From Octopus sinensis (lineage: Eukaryota): a DNA stretch of 64,000 bases. The notes under the pieces are model-generated. The model had not been told where the DNA came from, ran no database searches, and worked only from the letters and a program-made list of their open reading frames with translations. The stretch is from the NCBI RefSeq assembly GCF_006345805.1, contig NC_043006.1, positions 75,206,001 to 75,270,000 on the forward strand, given 5' to 3'. This document shows positions 6,881 through 63,296 of this stretch, in pieces. The translations under genes and the position numbers were made by a program. How positions within the stretch are numbered: the first letter of the stretch is position 1; the number at the start of each line of letters is the position of its first letter.

Positions 6881-7139
6881 ATGCACACAATAAAATTTCT
6901 TTTGCTTATGTTATTTTGGAAATATTGTGGCACAGAGGCCTGTGGTTTGAAAAGGAATGTGGCAGGATATTCTTTGAGTAATTGCAGGATTGGTTTCAAA
7001 AAAGGAACAGGAAGTACTGTTTGGCATTTTTGTGAAGGGTGGTTGTGGTTGGTAGTGGAGGATATAGGGGTGTTGATGCACTGGAGTGAACACAGGCTTC
7101 AGGGGAGGGATGTGTCAGATGATAAACTCTTGGGAGACT

Positions 7140-7680
7140 CATGTGAATATGGTTGAGGGTAGCAGGGCATTTGGTGTGACTGGTGGTAGGGAGAGAGATG
7201 GGTGGAGATGAAGGGAAAGAGAGTGATAAAGAAATGTAAGGGGAAGAGAGACTGATAGATAGAAATGCAGTAGGGATGAGAAAGAGAGAGAGAGAGAGAG
7301 AAAGAGAGAAGGGAGACAGGTGGAGATGCAGGGGTAGAGAGAGAAATAGATAAGTAAGGAATGAAAGAGAGAGAAGCTGGGAAGGAGATAGATAGATAGA
7401 TAGATAGATAGTAGATAGATAGATAGAGAGAGAGAGAGAGAAGCTGGCAAAAAGAGAGAAAGAGACAGGTAGAGAAGCAAGGAGAGAGGTAGAGAAGGCA
7501 GGGAGGGAGAAGGTAAAGAAAGGGAAGGAAGAAGACAGAGAAAGAAAGAGAGAGATGAGGGAAAGAGAGGGAGATGGAGGACAAGAGAGAGTGGTGGAGG
7601 GAGAAAGAGTAATGGTAGAGAGAGTATGATGGAGGGAGAGGGAAAGACAGAGGGAAAAAAGTGGGGAGATTGTGAGAGTG
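7140..7680. repeat. purine-rich low-complexity tract (GA/GATA)n
   Basis: Direct inspection. Confidence 0.85.
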
Positions 7681-7695
7681 TATGGCAGATTTTTG

Positions 7696-7918
7696 AAGTG
7701 AGCTGGCAGAAACGTTAGCACGCCGGGCGAAATGTGTAGCTGTATTTCGTCTGCCGTTACGTTCTGGGTTCAAATTCCGCCAAGGTTGACCTTGCCTTTC
7801 ATCCTTTCAGGGTCGTTAAATTATGTACTATTTACACACTGGGGGTCGACTTAATCTGTTTGTCTGTCCTTGTTTGTCCTCTCTGTGTTTAGCCCCTTGT
7901 GGGTAGTAAAGAAATAGG
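7696..7918 (+). mobile_element. tRNA-derived SINE family A, long tail
   Basis: gagctggcagaaacgttagcacg...ggttcaaattcc (B box)...tagtaaagaaata. Confidence 0.85.
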
Positions 7919-28516: not shown

Positions 28517-29801
28517 CAGGGTGGGGAAGCAAAATTTACAATATTTTGAGGCAGGGATTGAAAGACAGTGTATGACCAATTTGTTTATTGAAAGTCATGA
28601 GAATTTATTGCCACAAGACAATTTACATAATAGAAAATATTTTTATACTATGTATCTTCCTTCTTTCTCAATAACTGCCTTCACACGCTTCCTGAAACTT
28701 GCACAGGCGTTGCTCAAATATTTGGGAGACAACTTCTCCCATTCTTCTTTAATAGTATATTTAAGGAAGTCGACATTGCTATCTGATATTCTATTGGTAG
28801 CATGTTATAAAACGCCCCAAATAGCATAATCCAGTGCATTTAGATCTGGGCTAGAAGGCGGCCATAAACATGATTCCAAAAAATTGCTAAAGTTGGATTT
28901 ACAGAAATCTTGTATTTTTCTAGCTGTGTGGGCTGGAGCACCATCCTGTGTCCATACATAATTACCATCTGCGTAGTTTGCTTTAATCCATGGCAATACC
29001 TGGTATCTCAGAGTCTTGTAGTAAGTATTAACATTGATCTTTTCATCAGCTTTGTAGAATTTTATAGGCATTTTCTTTCTATCGGAAGCCACAACACCAA
29101 AAGCCATAACTTGAGCAGGATCTTTTGTTTTGAATGTCCCCTTAACTCAGCTGTTGAGTTTGCGATAAATCTGTCATTTCTGCTGTTCAGAACAGCATCA
29201 ACAGTAAAGATCTTTTCATCTGAAAAGATCGTTGCAAAAAGATTGTTCTTGAACCATATAATAATTTTCTTGCACCTTTCCAATCTCTTTTCCTTCATAG
29301 CTGTTGTCAACAAGTGTTTTGGTGTTCTTGTGTAAGATTTTAACCTAAAATCATATTTTACAGCATTTCTAATGGTCGTGTTGTCTACCTCAAGTTCAAT
29401 TGCCATTTTTCACATGGATTTGGTTGGATCCTTTAGGAGTTTGGATTTGAGAGCTTTAATAAAAGCTTTGGTATGTTTTTTGTTGATACCACAACTTCCA
29501 GACTTACTCGTAATAGTTTTGCTCATAGTCATTCTATTCTTTACATTATAAATAGTCTTTATGGACACTCCAACTATTTTTGAAATCTCCTTTGGTGTGA
29601 CGAGTGCATTCAGAAAATCACACACTCTTTGACTTTTGCTTTCCTGATTACTCATATGGGCAAAAGTTTCTGAAAAGGTAAGTATAATAGTGTTAGGTAT
29701 GAGTATGACATCAATATATGCTAGGTTTCAAAATAATTGATTTAGTGCCTCCTGAGAAAAAACAACTTAACGTTCATTGTAAATTTTGCTTCCCCACCCT
29801 G
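28517..29801 (-). mobile_element. full-length Tc1/mariner DD37D (maT/Bmmar1-type) transposon, 1285 bp
   Basis: Perfect 26-bp TIRs CAGGGTGGGGAAGCAAAATTTACAAT; TA on both sides, inside a (TA)n array. Confidence 0.95.
28643..29655 (-). pseudogene. DD37D transposase pseudogene (2 frameshifts, 1 premature stop)
   Basis: MSNQESK...HTH region; FSDEK; QDGAPAH-...-WPPSSPDLNALDY with 37 residues between the 2nd and 3rd Asp; reads through to KEGRYIV* after the stop at 28805. Confidence 0.92.
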
Positions 29802-31390: not shown

Positions 31391-32067
31391 ATATTAAAAC
31401 AATACATACTGAGTAAAAGGTAATACCCACCCCCACTCCTATATCAAAAGACACCCCTTCAAAAAAAGAAAAACAAACCCCTGAAAATACTTCAAGCCAA
31501 CTGATTGTGGATCAATACCTACAGCTGGCAGACACACTGTAGTCATGCAAAAAAAAAAATATATATAATAAAAATAAAAATAAAACATACTAAAATAATG
31601 ATTTAGTATCACTATTAACCCCTTTCCCCTACAGTTGTTGTTCTGCTCCTGTATACTCTTCCTTCTACTCCTATAGAAACACCACTGTAGAGGGAATTAG
31701 AAAGTAAGGGAGGAAAGAAAGAAGGAAAGCTGGGAAGGTGAAGAAAGGAGTCGAAGGTGGTAGGTGTGTGTGTGTATGGTGGTGGAGGGTAGGGTCAAGG
31801 GGCAGGTTTAGTGAAAAACGGAAGGCAGTTGCTGACATGCAAAGAAGAATGCAGTCGGTCACAAAGGTGTGTGAAAAACACCATTTATACCCTCTCCCCC
31901 CACACACATACGCATGCACATACACGCATGTGCGAACATGCACACACATGTGCATGTGTGCACACACCTGAGAAACTTCTCACCATCCTCAAAATCAAAG
32001 TTTTTGCTAACATGACACACCTTATCCTAGCTACACGCACACAGGTTGTTGATGATGGTGGTTTCAT

Positions 32068-32068
32068 G

Positions 32069-32126
<58 letters not shown>

Positions 32127-32162
32127 CTTGTCTATCTACCTGTCTATCTATCTATCTGTCTG

Positions 32163-32218
<56 letters not shown>

Positions 32219-32226
32219 CATGTCTC

Positions 32227-32294
<68 letters not shown>

Positions 32295-32302
32295 CATGTC
32301 TC

Positions 32303-32378
<76 letters not shown>
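32068..32378. repeat. (TATC)n array with periodic acatgtctctc interruptions
   Basis: Direct inspection. Confidence 0.95.
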
Positions 32379-33042
32379 ACGGGAAGGAAGAGCTATTTTC
32401 ATCATCCTTGTGGCTATGGCGAAAGAATGTATCTGGTGGACGCGTCTGAAAGGATTGGAGACAAACACTTTCCTCTCTGGTCAATCTCTCATCAACTTCT
32501 TCAAGTACCACTTGAAAAGGAAAGTGAGAGTAGAGAGGCAAGTTTTGTCTAGCGAATGTTTTAAAAAAGATGGGTGAATGTAGCAAGAATGGCACGTATG
32601 AATGACGAAGCCACCTGAGCATAGTCCTATGAACCCAGAAATCGAAAACAGAGAGTTGCTTATTTGCAAAAAAAAAAAAAAAAAAAAAGAAATATAAAAT
32701 GTGACTTCATTGACCGAGGTTACCGTGGTCTTTTCCGCAGGCTTTTCTTTCCACGGGTAAACCTCACCTGTCCTCCCCTTTACACTTCATATTGACATTT
32801 CTGTGATAACGATCCCTATTGATCATTTTTTTTTTCCTCTCCCCCCCTTTTTTTTTATTTTATTTTTTTTTAAACCCCCCCTTATTTTTGTCCTCTTTCT
32901 CTCCTTTTACGATCCCTTTTGATCGAACCTCCCCCTTCCTTTTTTTTTTTTTTTTTTTTTTTAATACCTTCAAAAGAAAAGCTCTACCTTGTAATTTGTT
33001 CTATCTGTGGTGCAGCCCTGTGTGGCTAATAAAGAAACATAC

Positions 33043-33066
33043 TACATGTCTCTCTATCTATCTATC

Positions 33067-33122
<56 letters not shown>

Positions 33123-33128
33123 CATGTC

Positions 33129-33188
<60 letters not shown>

Positions 33189-33196
33189 CATGTCTC

Positions 33197-33240
<44 letters not shown>

Positions 33241-33248
33241 CATGTCTC

Positions 33249-33304
<56 letters not shown>

Positions 33305-33312
33305 CATGTCTC

Positions 33313-33356
<44 letters not shown>

Positions 33357-33683
33357 CATGTCTATCTACCTGTCTATCTATCTGTCTGTCTGTCTGTCTG
33401 TCAATCTATCTATCTATCCACTTATCTAATTATGTATTTATGTATGAATTTAATCTGTCTTTCTATCTGTCCTGTCTGTCTGTCTGTCTCTCTCTATGTG
33501 TGTGTGTGTGTATACTGAGAGAGAGAGTGAGAGTGAGAGAGAGAGAGTGAGAGGGAGACTGAGAGAGTGAGAAAGAGAGTGAGAGATGGAGTGAGTGTGT
33601 GCTTGTGTGTGTATATATATATTGTGTGTATGTGTATACATATGTATGTATGCATATACATGTATACATAGGCATTATATATA

Positions 33684-37940: not shown

Positions 37941-38908
37941 AAATATATACACGCACATTATACATACGTGTGTATAGATGAATATATAAATACATTTAAA
38001 TATCTATATACACTTTTGGGCGATCTTTCTGCTACTTGGAGATAACTTTAGATCTTATTTTCGTCCTAAAAAACTTTGTATGGAGTGAATGGTTACCTCT
38101 ATGGAAATATATACACACACGTTATACATACATGTGTGCATAGATGAATATATAAATACATTTATATATCTATAACACTTTTGGGCGATCTTTCTGCTAC
38201 TTGGAGATAACTTTAGATCTTATTTTCGTCCTAAAAAACTTTGTGCGGAGTGAATGGTTACGTCTATGGAAATATATACACATACATTATACATACATCT
38301 GTGTATAGATGAATATATAAATACATTTAAATATCTATATACACTTTTGGGTGATCTTTCTGCTACTTGGAGATAACTTTAGATCTTATTTTCGTCCTAA
38401 AAAACTTTGTGCGGAGTGAATGGTTACGTCTATGGAAATATATACACATACATTATACATACATCTGTGTATAGATGAATATATAAATACATTTAAATAT
38501 CTATATACACTTTTGGGTGATCTTTCTGCTACTTGGAGATAACTTTAGATCTTATTTTCGTCCTAAAAAACTTTGTGCGGAGTGAATGGTTACGTCTATG
38601 GAAATATATACACATACATTATACATACATCTGTGTATAGATGAATATATAAATACATTTATATATCTATATACACTTTTGGGTGATCTTTCTGCTACTT
38701 GGAGATAACTTTAGATCTTATTTTCGTCCTAAAAAACTTTGTGCGGAGTGAATGGTTACGTCTATGGAAATATATACACATACATTATACATACATCTGT
38801 GTATAGATGAATATATAAATACATTTAAATATCTATATACCTTTTGGGTGATCTTTCTGCTACTGGATATACTTTAGATCTTATTTTCGTCCTAAAAAAC
38901 TTTGTATG
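37941..38908 (+). repeat. tandem satellite, 164-166-bp unit, ~5.8 copies
   Basis: Unit starts aaatatatacac at 37941, 38105, 38270, 38436, 38602 and 38768. Confidence 0.95.
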
Positions 38909-39209
38909 AATTGAAAAGAAAATGAATTGAAATTTTTAGAAAGGAATTTGTTTACATACATGTGTGAAATGGCAAATGTTTGTGCAGTTGTCCGAAATGG
39001 AACCAGGGTAAATGTGTGGAACTGATGTATTATAATGAATAGTTTGACTAAAACTCTTGAAGGTGGTGCCTCAGCATGGCCGCAGTCAAATGACTGAAAC
39101 GAGTAATTGATAAAAAAAGATGAAAGGGTGTTTAGCTACTAATTAACCCTCTGACTTTCATTGTTTCTTTTCTCTATGATTCCGCAGCAAATGAGAATAT
39201 CATTTATTT

Positions 39210-39441
39210 ATCTTTTACTTGTTTCGGTCGTTGGACTGTGACCATACTGGAGCACCACTTTGAAGGGTTTAGTTGAAACAAATCAACCCCAGTACTTATG
39301 CTTTTTAAAATCTGGTCCTTATTTTATCAATCACTTTTGCTGAACCGCTAGTTTCAGGGATGTAAGCAAACTAACATTGGTTATCAAATGATGGTGGTGG
39401 TGGTGGCAGGGCTAAAACACAAAGACACACTCACTCACTCA

Positions 39442-39504
<63 letters not shown>

Positions 39505-39660
39505 ACACACACATACACAAAAACATGATGGGCTTCCACACAGTTTCCATGTACAACATTCACTCACAAGGCATTGGTGGGACCTGGACTATGATAAAAG
39601 ATACCTGCTCACAGTACTGCACAATGGGACTGAACTCAAACCAGAGGGCTCCAAACAAGC
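39210..39660 (-). mobile_element. SINE family B variant, decayed, with a (CA)n core
   Basis: ttttacttgtttcggtcgttggactg...aatgggactgaactc. Confidence 0.7.
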
Positions 39661-39739
39661 TCCTTAATTACACATCCAACCCTGATGTTTTATATTTTAT
39701 ACAATTTGTCTTTTTTCTTATCATGTTTGTTATTAGTGT

Positions 39740-39861
39740 TTTATATTATGTTTTTTTCATTTTTTTTCAGGTAAGTGTCAATCCTTCTGGGAATGGTGTA
39801 CCATTTTAAATCCAATCGAACTGTGAATGTTGATTACTTATAATTATTTGATAAGGTATGT
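39740..39861 (+). other. candidate recursive splice site (AG|GTAAGT at 39770/39771) with an 85-nt RS-exon
   Basis: Long U tract ...tttttttcattttttttcag directly followed by gtaagt; downstream donor AAG|gtatgt at 39856; stops in all three frames. Confidence 0.5.
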
Positions 39862-40311
39862 TGAGACGTTTCTGTGATTACTAACAATGATAACAATCTC
39901 TTGGACATTACACAATGACAATTTTTTTTCAACTAATATGAATCATGAACAGAATTTCTTATTAAAAATAAAAAAAAAAGAAATGGAAGTAAAGTTACCT
40001 TCTCTTGTGGTGAAATCCTGACACCCCTGTAGGACAGCAAATGAACTGTCCTAAACCTTATAAAGGCGCATGTGTACTGACAATGCAACATAGTGTGGTA
40101 TGTGCAGTTGCATTTGTGATGGCAGTCACAGAAGTCGTTGTTACTGACTTAGTTTTTGTAGGTTATGACACTGTTACAGTGTAGTCTTTATCTAAACCAA
40201 GGATATAAGAGTGTTGACAAGGATGAGATCAGTGGAAATAAATATATAATAAATAAAAGAAAAATATTGACCTCCAAGGAAAGTCAGACTCAAAAAGGGG
40301 AGTTGTGGTGG

Positions 40312-40757
40312 GGCATGGATACATTGAAACCCCGACGTCTGGCAGCTGACTTGGGAGACACCCATAAAATTATTAACCATCTTACTAACAATAACTCTGA
40401 GCACCTTTTCAAACTCTACCTGTCTAACACCCGTGGATATGTTTACAAAGTCAGAAAACAGCACAGCTCCCATGACTTTCAGAAACATTTTTTCATGCTA
40501 AGAGTTGCTGAAGCATGGAACAGACTGCCGGCATCAGTTGTTAGTTGTCGGAGCACTGCATCCTTCAAAACTTCCATGCTTCCTGAGATTCACCAACACT
40601 ACACCTGATTTTCTCCCCTCCATATACAGACAAGCATGTATCTGACTCATACACTGTTCACCTTCCAGACATTTGTACATTACTGCATATTCTTTATATG
40701 CACTTTTGACAAGTTGTGGTGCACCTGAGCACTGTATACAATAATTTCATTATTATT
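40312..40757 (+). mobile_element. CR1/L2-clade LINE 3' fragment
   Basis: GMDTLKPRRLAADLGDTHKII...TRGYVYKVRK...KHFFMLRVAEAWNRLPASVVSC...FK; 3' UTR ending (att)n. Confidence 0.85.
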
Positions 40758-40775
40758 AAATCCTGACACCCCTGT

Positions 40776-40970
40776 GGGATAGCAAGTGCTTTCATGGCGT
40801 ATAAATTCTCCACCTGGATGAGACGCTGGTCCATCACAGGATTATTCATTTTAGCCAGCTGAGTGGACTGGAGCAACATGAAATGAAGTGTTTTGTTGTT
40901 TTGTTCAAGAACACAACGCATTGCCTGGTGCAGGAATTGAAACTGCAATCCAACACCTTAACCATGGCCA
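40776..40970 (-). mobile_element. SINE family E, host of the CR1 insertion
   Basis: ccacctggatgagacgctgg...cagctgagtggactggagcaacatgaaatgaag...aagaacacaacgc; its tail continues at 39985-40043. Confidence 0.7.
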
Positions 40971-41065
40971 GATATGTTTTCCATTGTAAACTGGAAATGA
41001 ACAATTTGCTTGTATGAGGGTGATGCTTGTTTACAACAATCACGTGATGTGAAGACAGTGGTACA

Positions 41066-45085: not shown

Positions 45086-46119
45086 ATACGTAATAGAACA
45101 GGCACTGTCGTGCCCTACAGCTCGGCAGGCTTTCGCAATAGCAATGAATGTTCGACTCAGTGTTTAAAGAAATATCGAGACACGAATTTCCTTTAAGTTA
45201 GTGACAGTCAAATGCACGGCATTGACAAGCCTCAACAAAGGCGAAAAGCCCTTTGTGGTTTTCGCGAGTTACTGTAGCCACAATGTTCGTCTTGCTTCTT
45301 CGTTCGTCTTGTACCTTATTTAATAGCATAATAGTCGCACCGTAATTTCAGTTGCATATACTCAAGAAAGACTGTTTTAAATGTATCAACGCTTGTAATA
45401 TAGGGCCCAACTTCGCAGATAGGACCCAGGTAATTTTTTTTTCGACGTTTTCTTGGAAGGAAAATGTTCCTCTTATAAGCCATCCAATATGGTATATTGA
45501 GTTTTCACCACGACACATCTATAAAGAGATTTTATTTCAGACAATTTCACCGTATAAAATCTTCTAATGATGTGCATAAATTTAGTATGATACGCAGATG
45601 GCGAGTCCTGGTACATATTTTATTGATCCTCAGAGTGAACAATACCAAAATTAATTTTTGGTAAAAGACGAACTCAAAAACCACCGACCATCAAATTAAG
45701 TCGAGCCAAAGCCTAAATTCTCTCCTGGTCTCCAACCACATTTCTCAAGTCTCGTTACCATTTAATAATAGTAAGTTATTGTGTTAACCAGGAATAGGTT
45801 ACGGTAGGCAGTGGGAGACGAAAAAATTCCAAAATGGACACAGACAAACGCAGTCAGATGTAAAGTACGTTTTCCTGTTTTCTTTTTATTTTGTCCAAGT
45901 CAGTGTGATTTCATTATTTAAGCTACTTCATAAATATATCTTTGATGAAAGGTTCATATTTTATTCTTGTCCGGTTGCCAATATATTTCGTAATTAGGTC
46001 TTCGTAGTCAGTCACATGAACTAAGTAGAGAGCCATACAGTGGTTGTTGTATTTGCTGTTGTTCTTTCTCTTTTTCTATAGCATTGTCTCTTTTTTGTAA
46101 TGGGGTTAGGGTTAGATAG

Positions 46120-46316
46120 ATAGATAGATAGATAGAGAGAGAGTGTGTGTGTATGTGTGTGTGAGAGAGAGAATATGTATGTGTGTGTGTGAGAGAGAGA
46201 GAGAGAGTGCATGCGTGTGTGAGAGAGAGAGAGAGAGAGTGTATGTGTGTGAGAAAGTGTATGTGTGTATTGTGAGAAAGAGAGAGTGTGTGTGTATGCG
46301 TGTGTGTGTGAAAGAG

Positions 46317-46348
<32 letters not shown>

Positions 46349-46990
46349 TGTGCATGCGTGTGTGAGAGAGAGAGTATATGTGTGTGTGAGAAAGTGTATG
46401 TGTGTATGTGAGAAAGAGTGTGTGTGTGTGAGAGAGAGAGTGTGTGTATGTGTGTGTGAGAGAGAGAATATGTATGTGTGTGTGTGAGAGAGAGAGAGAG
46501 AGTGCATGCGTGTGTGTGAGAGAGAGAGAGAGTGTATGTGTGTGAGAAAGTGTATGTGTGTATTGTGAGAAAGAGAGAGTGTGTGTGTATGCGTGTGTGT
46601 GTGAGAGAGAGAGAGTGTGTGTGTGTGTGAGAGAGAGAGTGTGCATGCGTGTGTGAGAGAGAGAGTATATGTGTGTGTGAGAAAGTGTATGTGTGTATGT
46701 GAGAAAGAGTGTGTGTGTGAGAGAGAGAGAGTGTGTGTGTATGTGTGTGTGAGAGAGAATGTGTATGTGTGTGTGTGAGAGAGAAAGAGAGTGCATGCGT
46801 GTGTGAGAGTGTATGTGTGTATGTGAAAAAGAGAGAGTGTGTGTGTATGCGCGCGCGTACGTGTGTGTGAGAGAGAGTGTGTATGTGTGTGAGAGAGAGA
46901 GTGTATGTGTGTATGTGAAAAAGAGAGAGTGTGTGTGTATGTGTGTGTATGAGGGAGAGAGAGAGAGAGAGTGTGTGTGTGTGTGTGTGA
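46120..46990. repeat. (GA)n/(GT)n mosaic with a ~296-bp higher-order period
   Basis: Marker gagagagagaatatgtatg recurs at ~46162 and ~46458. Confidence 0.85.
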
Positions 46991-47599
46991 ACGATAAGCT
47001 TTGTGTGTCTGTGTAAACAAATAGGCAATATTGATATGACACTAGTGTATTCTCCCTGGGATATCTCTTCATCTGTTTTCAGAACCTCACACTAGGGTCT
47101 TATTTGATTCGTGCATTAAATCATTGACTCCGAAAGGATGACAGGCCAGGTTGATCTTGGTAGGATTTAGATTTAGAACATAAATAACCAGAAGAAATAC
47201 TACAAAGCATTGTCCGATGATTTTTACCAATCAACTGCCTTTCGTATTATTTAGTTAATTCCTTCATTCACTCTGGAGTGTAGGCCATCGATGGCTCTCC
47301 TCTGTTGTTCTCTACTGTTCTCGACTCTGGGTTATCTTTTTCTGCCTCTGCCAGGTCTTGTTGGTCTTGAACTCTCACCGATGCTTCTGTAACTTTACCC
47401 TTTTGCTAGGTAGGAGTATTAGCCCTATGTTGACCCTTTTTTACCTCTGGTTATATTAGTTTGGCCCCTATCCTTTGACCTGTCCAACAAGGAAGGCCCT
47501 ATAAGGAGTTTGTGCTCTGCTTGTATAACTCTCATGCCATCGATACACACAAGCCACAACACTGCAACAAGGACTAGACCGTGAGGCTGGCTCCTTATA

Positions 47600-61430: not shown

Positions 61431-62099
61431 TATCTAATATTGATCTACAGGAGGACAGGCAACAAGCGTAATAGTGTTGTAGAAGTCAATTGCCCAGATC
61501 ATATGAACCTCTCGAATAATGGTGCGTAAAATGAGAGCATAGATGTTGATCTAATGCAGAGGCCGACAGCTCTTTCATCCTATAGCCTAATCTATAGATT
61601 GCAATCTATAGAATCTATGGAGGTTATGTATTGTTAGCAAGCAGTAAAATGATACCATTGCTGGTTGGAGTGGTTGCTGCTGCTCGTAGTTTAGTGTTGT
61701 AGATACATCATATGAGAGAGTGGAAAAAGAACATCTCATTCCGCCGTTCCAATATTCCAACATGCTGGATTTCATTTACCGAACGTCGAAAGAATGCAAA
61801 CCAAAGCTAACTGAGGCAGAATTTGAACTCAGAGCGCTGAGAGCTTGAGCAAATACAAGGCATTTTATCCGTTGCTCTAACGACTTTACCAATTCACGTT
61901 CGTTGACATTTACACAAATAGGTCTGTGTGTATGTGTGTGTGTGTGTGTATCTATATGCGCATATGTATATGTATACACGCACACACACGCTTGCTTGCT
62001 TGCTTGCTTGCACGCATACATATATAAGTAGGGAACATGAGTGTTTCTGAAGAATTAATGTGTGCCTGCATATTTTAGTGTACATATTTATGTACCTGG

Positions 62100-62111
62100 G
62101 TGTTTGTCTGC

Positions 62112-62165
<54 letters not shown>

Positions 62166-62186
62166 GTCTATCTATCTATCTATCTA

Positions 62187-62219
<33 letters not shown>

Positions 62220-62287
62220 ATGTCTGTCTGTCTGTCTGTGTGTCTGTGTGCCTGCCTGCCTGTGTACCTGCCTGCCTGCCTGCCTGC

Positions 62288-62326
<39 letters not shown>

Positions 62327-62990
62327 TCTATCTGTCTATTTTCCTCTCTCTCTCTCTCTCTCTGTATATATAAAATAGAGATATCTATATATGTTCCTGT
62401 TGTGTGCCTTGCACACACACACACACACACACACGCACGCACACACACATATATACACACACACACATACACATATACACACACGCATGCACACGCACAC
62501 ATAATCACTCACATACACACACACTCAAATATTCACACATAGATGTATCACTGAAATAGAATATTGATTCCCAACTGAGCGTGCTCTATATGCCTCACTG
62601 CTGCAGTAGAGCAAGGCCATCAAATATAACTAATTCGACAGACACACTCGTATGTGTCTGTGTGTCTGAATACATACATACATACATCATACATACATAC
62701 ATACATACATACATACATACATACATACATACACACACACATACATACATACATACATGCATACACACATACATACGTACATACATACATACATACATAC
62801 ATACATACATGCATACACACACATACATACATACATACATACATACATACATACATACATACATACATACATACATACATACATACATACATACATGCAT
62901 ACATACATACATACATGCATGCATACATACATACATACATACATACATGCACACACACATGCACACACACATACACACACACACACACAT
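62100..62990. repeat. compound microsatellites (TATC, TGTC, TGCC, CA, CATA)
   Basis: Direct inspection. Confidence 0.95.
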
Positions 62991-62993
62991 ATT

Positions 62994-63296
62994 CAGGGGG
63001 CGGTGAATAAAATGTCGTCTAAATTACGCGAAAATTAATATAATACTGACATCTTATTTTAGCGGATATATTTACCAAAATTACATAATGATATCTTGAA
63101 ACACTAAAGAGTAGATTTATTCCATAAAATCGCCATTGGCTTCAACCACGGTCGCCAGAGAATTTTGGAATCTCCTGCAACTCTTCTGGACGGTCTTCTT
63201 GTTGAAGTTGGTGAATGCTGCCATAATCCTTGCCTTCAGTTTATCTTTGGTGTTACAAGGAGTTTTGTTGGTCTCTCGCTCAAATGCACCCCACAA
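62994..63296 (-). mobile_element. 3' end of a second maT/Tc1-type transposon
   Basis: Minus-strand peptide VWGAFERETNKTPCNTKDKLKARIMAAF...CRRFQNSLATVVEANGDFME*, resembling the C-terminus of the 28.5-kb transposase; truncated by a SINE B tail. Confidence 0.75.

What the first reader, a model, noticed from the sequence alone, without database searches (positions are those of the whole stretch)
39740..39861. Candidate recursive splice site with a stop-containing RS-exon
Seen: a U-rich tract ending tttttttcattttttttcAG is directly followed by a consensus donor GTAAGT (39771). A second donor AAG|gtatgt lies 85 nt downstream, and the enclosed segment has stop codons in all three frames. Established: juxtaposed 3'/5' sites mark ratchet points in long Drosophila and vertebrate introns, and vertebrate RS-exons often carry premature stops. 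Inference: stepwise removal of a long + strand intron in a mollusc.
Basis: partly seen in the sequence, partly recalled or inferred. Interest (0 to 1): 0.72.

Follow-up and report, generated by a model that had tools for sequence, protein, structure and literature searches.

The report
Unproven recursive-splice-site look-alike in octopus DNA
A textbook-perfect "recursive splice site" motif really is present in this octopus-type sequence, but nothing available here shows that this strand is transcribed or that the site is conserved. It remains a credible but untested candidate, and is more likely than not an unused look-alike.

Summary
The sequence ...TTTTTTTCATTTTTTTTCAG|GTAAGT has its junction at 39770/39771. 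AAG|GTATGT follows with GT at 39856, enclosing 85 nt with stops in all three frames.

The junction also meets fly ratchet-point details: TT at -5/-6, a yUnAy branch point at -28, and no AG in between. It is the only such site on either strand of the window. About 0.002-0.013 are expected per 64 kb. A 2.8 Gb octopus genome should still hold roughly 100-550 by chance, and about 5-40 with an equally good donor downstream.

The stop codons carry no weight, because 40% of random 85-mers have them.

The site lies in single-copy AT-rich DNA. It is 80 nt beyond the head of an old minus-strand SINE and 540 nt before a plus-strand LINE tail, and belongs to neither.

I found no exon, host gene, transcript or orthologous sequence, so transcription, intron membership and conservation are untested.

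My estimates:
- unused look-alike: about 0.55
- genuinely used recursive site or RS-exon: about 0.27
- ordinary non-coding or terminal exon: about 0.1

If real, it would be a new member of a known kind and the first reported in a mollusc.

The parts
39740..39744 (+). Candidate branch point tttAt (yUnAy), with the A at 39743, which is position -28 from the acceptor
   Evidence: Read. No AG lies between it and 39769. Fly ratchet-point branch points lie at -36 to -21.
39750..39768 (+). Polypyrimidine tract gtttttttcattttttttc, with 16 of 18 pyrimidines before the AG and TT at -5/-6
   Evidence: TT at -5/-6 is present in 99.5% of fly ratchet points.
39769..39776 (+). AG|GTAAGT: acceptor and consensus donor juxtaposed, the putative zero-nucleotide ratchet point (junction 39770/39771)
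39771..39855 (+). 85-nt segment between the two donors, the putative RS-exon. It has stops in all frames, and its length is not a multiple of 3.
   Evidence: The stop content is uninformative (40% of random 85-mers).
39853..39861 (+). Second donor AAG|GTATGT, matching 8 of 9 consensus positions
39879..39972 (+). Alternative reading: TACTAAC (39879-85), T8 (39922-29), first downstream CAG (39950-52), then ATTAAA/AATAAA (39961-72) and A10. This reads as a possible 97-nt mini-intron followed by a poly(A) signal.
   Evidence: Read. Signals only, not tested.
39197..39698 (-). Context: an old SINE copy in two halves around a (CA)n array. Its head ends at about 39690, so it does not contain the site.
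39699..40310 (.). Single-copy AT-rich spacer that holds the candidate. No homology to any transposable element was found.
40311..40759 (+). Context: 3' fragment of a jockey-like LINE, 93% identical to an Octopus vulgaris copy. Homology starts sharply at 40311/40312, so it does not contain the site.

Best explanation
The plus strand of a single-copy, AT-rich spacer between two retroelement fragments carries a complete set of splice-signal look-alikes. These are a branch point at -28, a T-rich tract, CAG|GTAAGT, and AAG|GTATGT 85 nt later.

The most likely reading is that this is a pseudo-exon or ratchet-point look-alike of the kind a 2.8 Gb, T-tract-rich genome produces by chance. It probably lies in DNA that is not transcribed in this sense, and so it does nothing.

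What is shown: the motif, its rarity per window, its position outside the neighbouring repeats, and the absence of any detectable exon nearby. What is inferred: that it is not used.

If the plus strand does turn out to be intronic, the spliceosome would be expected to recognise the site (see the first rival).
For: - Chance expectation is 0.002-0.013 per 64 kb. Over 2,800 Mb that is about 100-550 such junctions genome-wide, and about 5-40 with a donor scoring at least 8 of 9 within 30-250 nt.
- Annotated genes are sparse: 23,423 genes, median length 20 kb, median intron 2.5 kb, 8.4 genes per Mb. By my own estimate, not computed, a random site would fall in a sense intron less than about 20% of the time, and in a very long intron far less often.
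- No coding exon or protein-family hit was found in the non-repeat ORFs of the window.
- No ORF across or beside the site is on record.
- Rfam and tRNA searches were empty.
- The surroundings are a satellite, a SINE and LINE debris.
- In mammals, validated recursive sites are a minute fraction of AGGT sites.
- No paper in the library mentions both recursive splicing and octopus.
Against: - The motif is of top quality and unique in the window on both strands.
- A good second donor at +85 is present, which happens by chance only 6-7% of the time.
- With the donor included, chance supplies only tens of such sites per genome. Even a few dozen selected sites in octopus would make this reading no better than even.
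- The exon search was insensitive. It covered only ORFs of at least 45 aa, and the chimeric queries lose sensitivity: the weak DDE_3 hit vanished.
Confidence: 0.55

Rival explanations
1. This is a genuine recursive splice site with an RS-exon.

1. A long plus-strand intron is removed in steps. The 85-nt segment is first defined as an exon by the acceptor at 39770 and the donor at 39856.
2. The upstream exon is spliced to 39771. This rebuilds a GTAAGT donor, perfect at +1 to +6.
3. That donor out-competes the 8-of-9 donor at 39856, so the 85 nt leave with the downstream part of the intron.
4. If the 39856 donor is used instead, the 85-nt insert shifts the frame and brings stops, which would send the mRNA to nonsense-mediated decay.
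For: - All sequence criteria are met: a strong T-rich tract, TT at -5/-6, yUnAy at -28, an AG-free zone, CAG|GTAAGT, and a downstream donor.
- 50-69% of human candidate recursive sites are followed by an RS-exon, against 14% of controls.
- It is the only such site in 128 kb of strand sequence, and none was found in 57 kb of other octopus DNA.
- It is not derived from the neighbouring SINE or LINE, and no other copy was found.
- A 64-kb stretch with no detectable exon is what a very long intron would look like.
- In human, 60% of strong, conserved intronic AGGT sites have junction-read support, so a site like this in a sense intron would probably be used.
Against: - There is no evidence for a plus-strand gene, transcript or intron.
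- Conservation is untested.
- Chance look-alikes are expected in the tens to hundreds per genome.
- No recursive splicing has been reported in any mollusc, so the number of real sites is unknown.
- The plus-strand T>A and G>C skew cannot be used as support. 15.5 kb of annotated O. vulgaris genic sense strand shows no such skew.
Confidence: 0.27
2. This is an ordinary exon of an unannotated plus-strand transcript, not a ratchet point. It could be a non-coding, 5'-UTR or poison cassette exon (39771-39855). It could also be the start of a cryptic terminal unit: the 85-nt exon, a 97-nt mini-intron (39856-39952), then a poly(A) signal at 39961-39972.
For: - Both splice sites of the 85-nt segment are strong.
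- Downstream lie TACTAAC, a T8 run, the first CAG, and then ATTAAA/AATAAA followed by A10.
- Annotated exons that begin with a donor-like sequence are known in human (PMC6224609, abstract as listed).
- In mouse, 46 of 84 junction-supported AGGT candidates turned out to be unannotated exons.
Against: - There is no coding capacity.
- No matching protein or ORF is on record.
- All these signals are short and AT-rich, and common in this sequence.
- The 3' splice site at 39952 has no pyrimidine tract between the nearer branch-point candidate and the AG.
Confidence: 0.1
3. The motif is carried by an unrecognised repeat. In this reading the T-rich tract 39699-39768 is the decayed A-rich tail of a minus-strand retroelement whose 3' end reads ...ACTTACCTG, and the SINE inserted into that tail. 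Many copies of the same look-alike would then exist, like antisense Alu pseudo-acceptors in primates.
For: - About 70 nt of A-rich sequence on the minus strand lies directly upstream of the SINE head.
- Another SINE copy in the window also abuts a long T run (c25120rc).
- 29% of the window is repeated within itself.
Against: - No second copy of 39699-40310 exists in the window or in 57 kb of other octopus DNA.
- The inverted and direct repeats around the site are at chance level for AT-rich DNA (significance estimated by hand, about 0.6 such pairs expected).
- A family with fewer than about 10,000 copies would have escaped this test.
Confidence: 0.08

Closest known systems
Drosophila zero-nucleotide ratchet points (Ubx, kuz, luna and others; Burnette 2005, Duff 2015)
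   Same: A juxtaposed (Y)nNCAG|GTAAGT, a prominent T-rich tract, TT at -5/-6, and a branch point about 30 nt upstream. Cryptic downstream donors also mediate recognition in flies (PMC8605326 and PMC6110457, as listed).
   Different: Fly sites were shown by junction reads, saw-tooth coverage, lariats and conservation across species, and lie in introns of 11-133 kb. None of this is known here. In the compact fly genome the motif alone is predictive (91 of 160 predictions verified). In a genome 20 times larger (my comparison, from general knowledge of the fly genome size) it is not.
Vertebrate RS-exon-dependent recursive sites (CADM1/2, ROBO2, PDE4D, Lsamp and others; Sibley 2015, Zhang 2018, PMC8797253)
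   Same: AGGTAAGT with a strong 3' splice site, a short downstream exon closed by a second donor, and premature stops in that exon (68% of human RS-exons).
   Different: Vertebrate sites lie in the first or second introns (over 51 kb) of very long, brain-expressed genes, and are as conserved as exons. The host gene, intron and conservation are all unknown here.
Intronic or intergenic pseudo-exons and decoy exons
   Same: Good acceptor and donor pairs at exon-like spacing, without coding capacity, arising by chance in long non-coding DNA.
   Different: Ordinary pseudo-exons do not begin with a perfect GTAAGT. That extra feature is what makes this one stand out.
Splice sites derived from transposable elements (for example antisense Alu exonisation)
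   Same: A T-rich tract next to a retroelement supplies the polypyrimidine tract.
   Different: The tract and the junction lie outside the SINE consensus and outside the LINE. No repeat family carrying them was found.

Membership tests
Recursive splice site / ratchet point | Juxtaposed strong 3' splice site and 5' splice site around AG|GT (polypyrimidine tract, YAG, GTRAGT) | tested here: met
   ttttttttcag|GTAAGT, with 16 of 18 pyrimidines. It is the only such site among 398 AGGT sites in the window.
Recursive splice site / ratchet point | TT at -5/-6 and a branch point about 21-36 nt upstream (fly ratchet points) | tested here: met
   T at 39765 and 39766. yUnAy with the A at 39743 (-28), and no AG in between (criteria).
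Recursive splice site / ratchet point | Lies inside a long intron (over 10 kb in fly, over 50 kb in mouse) of a gene transcribed in the same sense | tested here: inconclusive
   No exon, domain or annotated protein was found on either strand. The searches were insensitive and the host assembly could not be reached. Strand skew is not usable.
Recursive splice site / ratchet point | Splicing intermediates: reads joining the upstream exon to the site, saw-tooth coverage, and lariats starting at the site | not testable with these tools
   No RNA-seq access.
Recursive splice site / ratchet point | Evolutionary conservation of the site above that of its flanks | not testable with these tools
   No orthologous sequence was retrievable.
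RS-exon (vertebrate type, also fly cryptic exons) | A usable 5' splice site a short distance downstream, so the site can be found by exon definition | tested here: met
   AAG|GTATGT at +85, 8 of 9 consensus positions. The chance of such a donor in 30-250 nt is 6-7%.
RS-exon (vertebrate type, also fly cryptic exons) | Inclusion would be harmful (premature stop or frameshift) | tested here: met
   Stops in all three frames, and 85 nt is not a multiple of 3. This does not discriminate: 40% of random 85-mers have stops in all frames.
SINE- or LINE-derived sequence | Homology to the neighbouring repeat families extends over the site | tested here: not met
   SINE copies stop aligning at about 39690. 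LINE DNA and protein homology starts at 40311/40312.

The most novel reading that the evidence does not exclude
The site is a working recursive splice site with an RS-exon in a cephalopod. That would be the first reported in Lophotrochozoa. It would imply that stepwise removal of long introns, with the same consensus and exon-definition logic as in flies and vertebrates, was already present in the bilaterian ancestor, or arose again in a third large-brained lineage with long neural genes.
Probability: 0.27. Interest if true: 0.5.

Novelty: new member of a known kind. Interest (0 to 1): 0.27.

Why it matters
Recursive splicing has been documented only in insects and vertebrates. No paper in the searched library links it to octopus. 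Cephalopods have large genomes and large nervous systems. A confirmed site would extend the mechanism to a third major animal lineage and would allow a genome-wide census.

As it stands, the finding is one motif match. Its main value is as a precise, cheap hypothesis that existing octopus total-RNA and Iso-Seq data could settle.

Tried and rejected
1. Site inside the plus-strand LINE whose tail ORF starts at 40165. Rejected: DNA and protein homology begin sharply at 40311/40312. An upstream similarity I saw by eye was spurious.
2. Site inside the SINE. Rejected: nine copies stop aligning at about 39690.
3. MITE or terminal inverted repeats, or target-site duplication, around the site. The repeats found are at chance level for AT-rich DNA.
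4. Another copy of 39699-40310. None in the window or in 57 kb of O. vulgaris and ENA octopus DNA.
5. Orthologue or transcript retrieval through ORFs. Exact look-ups of 12 window ORFs failed. The 94-aa ORF spanning the site has no homologue. Two exact-pattern scans of JGI metagenomes found nothing.
6. Host-gene search.
   - A 4,987-aa chimera of non-repeat ORFs gave no hit at E<=1e-5.
   - Pfam on 9.9 k aa of chimeras gave nothing, though chimeras lower sensitivity.
7. Strand skew as a sign of plus-strand transcription. The window shows T>A 3.6% and G>C 3.4%. Annotated octopus genic sense strand shows none, and unannotated DNA shows larger skews. Rejected as evidence.
8. Rfam and tRNA scans were empty. 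The bacterial promoter/terminator scan is irrelevant here.
9. One literature search was badly framed and returned nothing useful.

Full report
THE OBSERVATION

The plus strand reads ...gttattagtgttttatattatgtttttttcattttttttcag|GTAAGTgtcaat... The AG ends at 39770 and GTAAGT occupies 39771-39776. Further on, gataag|GTATGT has its GT at 39856. The enclosed segment, 39771-39855, is 85 nt. Frame 0 reads VSVNPSGNGVPF*, and the other two frames also have stops.

- T at both -5 and -6, as in 99.5% of fly sites.
- A yUnAy branch-point candidate with its A at 39743 (-28). Fly branch points lie at -36 to -21.
- No AG between that A and the acceptor.

IS IT MORE THAN CHANCE?

AGGTAAGT alone is not: 2 were found and 2.28 expected. 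With the pyrimidine tract, Y8NCAGGTAAGT at up to 1 mismatch gives one hit against 0.07 expected from dinucleotide shuffles.

I also made an estimate from the real sequence, because shuffles do not preserve the homopolymer runs of real DNA.
- The window has 398 AGGT sites on both strands.
- It has 15 YAG sites preceded by at least 85% pyrimidines in 18 nt, or 39 at the 80% threshold.
- P(GTAAGT after AG) is 1.4-3.3e-4.
- This gives 0.002-0.013 expected sites per 64 kb.

Only 39770 combines a pyrimidine tract, YAG and GTRAGT. None was seen in 57 kb of other octopus DNA.

The second donor scores 8 of 9 against MAG|GTRAGT. A donor that good lies 30-250 nt downstream of 6-7% of random positions. 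Stops in all three frames occur in 40% of random 85-mers and are worthless as evidence.

Scaled to the 2,800 Mb O. vulgaris assembly, chance supplies roughly 100-550 junction motifs of this quality. About 5-40 of them would also have such a donor.

WHAT SURROUNDS IT

The window is octopus-type DNA. The ORF at 40165-40608 hits Octopus vulgaris proteins named "jockey-like RNA-directed DNA polymerase", "Tick transposon" or "Hypothetical predicted protein" (up to 90% identity). Positions 40311-40759 are 93% identical to a copy on O. vulgaris OX597841.1.

About 29% of the window is repeated within itself. From left to right around the site:
- A 166-bp satellite, 37941-38905.
- An old SINE copy, 39197-39698. 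Its simple-repeat tail is on the left and a B-box-like motif reads on the minus strand, so I place the element on the minus strand (inferred).
- A single-copy AT-rich spacer, 39699-40310, which holds the candidate.
- The plus-strand LINE tail, 40311-40759.

An alignment of nine SINE copies loses all similarity at about 39690. LINE homology begins sharply at 40311/40312 at both DNA and protein level. The T-tract and the junction therefore belong to neither element.

No second copy of the spacer exists in the window or in the other octopus loci I could fetch. A low-copy repeat family cannot be excluded.

HOST GENE, TRANSCRIPTION AND CONSERVATION

- Twelve window ORFs are not in the protein collection.
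- The 94-aa ORF that crosses the site has no homologue.
- A 4,987-aa chimera of non-repeat ORFs, covering everything within 10 kb of the site plus the longest ORFs elsewhere, found nothing at E<=1e-5.
- Pfam found nothing in 9.9 k residues.
- Rfam and tRNA scans were empty.
- Two exact-pattern scans of metagenomes found nothing.

These searches would miss short exons. They say only that no exon is evident.

The plus strand shows T>A (3.6%) and G>C (3.4%) after masking repeats. From memory, this resembles the sense strand of mammalian introns. However, 15.5 kb of annotated O. vulgaris genic sense strand shows no skew, and unannotated DNA shows larger ones. I discard this lead.

WEIGHING THE READINGS

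In flies the motif is predictive: 91 of 160 computational predictions were verified, in a genome I take from general knowledge to be about 20 times smaller. Large genomes look different.
- Mouse brain: 19 sites among 4.77 million sense AGGT sites. Fewer than 0.06% of long introns are affected, and all sites lie in introns over 51 kb of genes over 294 kb.
- Human: 36,870 strong, conserved AGGT sites in long introns gave 342 candidates and 16 saw-tooth sites. Yet 60% had some junction-read support, and 50-69% of candidates were followed by an RS-exon against 14% of controls.
- A 2026 preprint reports 3,022 human sites.

So a site of this quality inside a sense intron would probably be used at least sometimes. 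The real unknown is whether this is a sense intron.

O. vulgaris has 23,423 annotated genes, with median length 20 kb and median intron 2.5 kb. By my own estimate, not computed, a chance site would lie in a sense intron less than about 20% of the time.

I combined the chance counts with a plausible 3-100 selected sites of this quality, and a likelihood ratio of about 7 for the second donor. That gives a 20-50% probability of use. My settled estimates are:
- 0.55 for an unused look-alike
- 0.27 for a working recursive site or RS-exon
- 0.10 for an ordinary non-coding or terminal exon
- 0.08 for an unrecognised repeat carrying the motif

These numbers rest on order-of-magnitude inputs and should be read that way.

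MECHANISM IF REAL (INFERRED FROM THE PUBLISHED MODELS, NOT SHOWN HERE)

1. The 85-nt unit is defined as an exon by the acceptor at 39770 and the donor at 39856.
2. The upstream exon is joined to 39771, which rebuilds a GTAAGT donor.
3. That donor beats the 8-of-9 donor at 39856, so the 85 nt leave with the rest of the intron.
4. Use of 39856 instead would insert 85 nt, causing a frameshift with stops in every frame, and would target the mRNA for decay.

A different reading of the same DNA is an 85-nt exon, then a 97-nt mini-intron, then ATTAAA/AATAAA with A10. The mini-intron would run GTATGT 39856, TACTAAC 39879-85, T8 39922-29, and the first AG at 39951-52. That would be a cryptic terminal unit.

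VERDICT

The interpretation can be neither supported nor refuted here. At sequence level the site passes every membership test for a recursive site. The defining functional tests (sense long intron, splicing intermediates, conservation) are untested.

If real, it is a new member of a known kind in a new phylum. More likely than not, it is a chance look-alike. Mapping the window to an annotated octopus assembly and looking at existing total RNA-seq would settle it quickly.

Noticed in passing
window 37941-38905: A 166-bp satellite with 5.8 tandem copies and 97% matches, about 1 kb upstream of the candidate.
   Followed up: partly
window 39197-39698 and at least 14 other places (e.g. 6687, 11306, 20061, 24587, 25163, 28106, 43102, 59841): An abundant SINE family on both strands. 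The copy next to the site is in two halves around a (CA)n array. The same two halves are adjacent in O. vulgaris at L001 4810-5176.
   Followed up: partly
window 40311-40759; L001 3716-4011 and 4069-4518: A 450-bp LINE 3' fragment, 93% identical to an O. vulgaris copy. There, two copies sit in tandem and are annotated as separate hypothetical proteins. In the window the ORF runs 146 nt upstream of where homology starts.
   Followed up: partly
window 40013-40043 and 40758-40788: A 31-nt direct repeat (90% identity) bracketing 40044-40757. It is either an unusually long target-site duplication or the edge of the next repeat (40760-41030). Not resolved.
   Followed up: no
window 28805-29727 (-): A Tc1/mariner-like transposase remnant, with weak DDE_3 and HTH_Tnp_Tc3_2 hits below Pfam cut-offs. 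The only other AGGTAAGT of the window (29676, +) lies in it and has no pyrimidine tract.
   Followed up: partly
window 39856-39985 (+): GTATGT, TACTAAC, T8, the first downstream CAG, then ATTAAA/AATAAA and A10. This reads like a 97-nt mini-intron followed by a poly(A) signal.
   Followed up: no
window about 700-800: A run of 100 N (assembly gap), flanked by simple repeats.
   Followed up: no
window 46008-47072, 32000-33500, 7000-7700, 62060-63010: Large microsatellite-like arrays that give long spurious ORFs and strong local GC skew, up to +0.44 at 46-48 kb.
   Followed up: no
whole window; L004 1-8354, L006 1-3521 and 14884-20366: The plus strand shows T>A 3.6% and G>C 3.4% after masking repeats. 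15.5 kb of annotated octopus genic sense strand shows no such skew, so it is not evidence of transcription.
   Followed up: yes
L003, L005 (ENA ERZ26693861): An ENA record filed as a metagenome assembly holds contigs with octopus-type LINE and SINE sequence. It looks like host (octopus) DNA.
   Followed up: no
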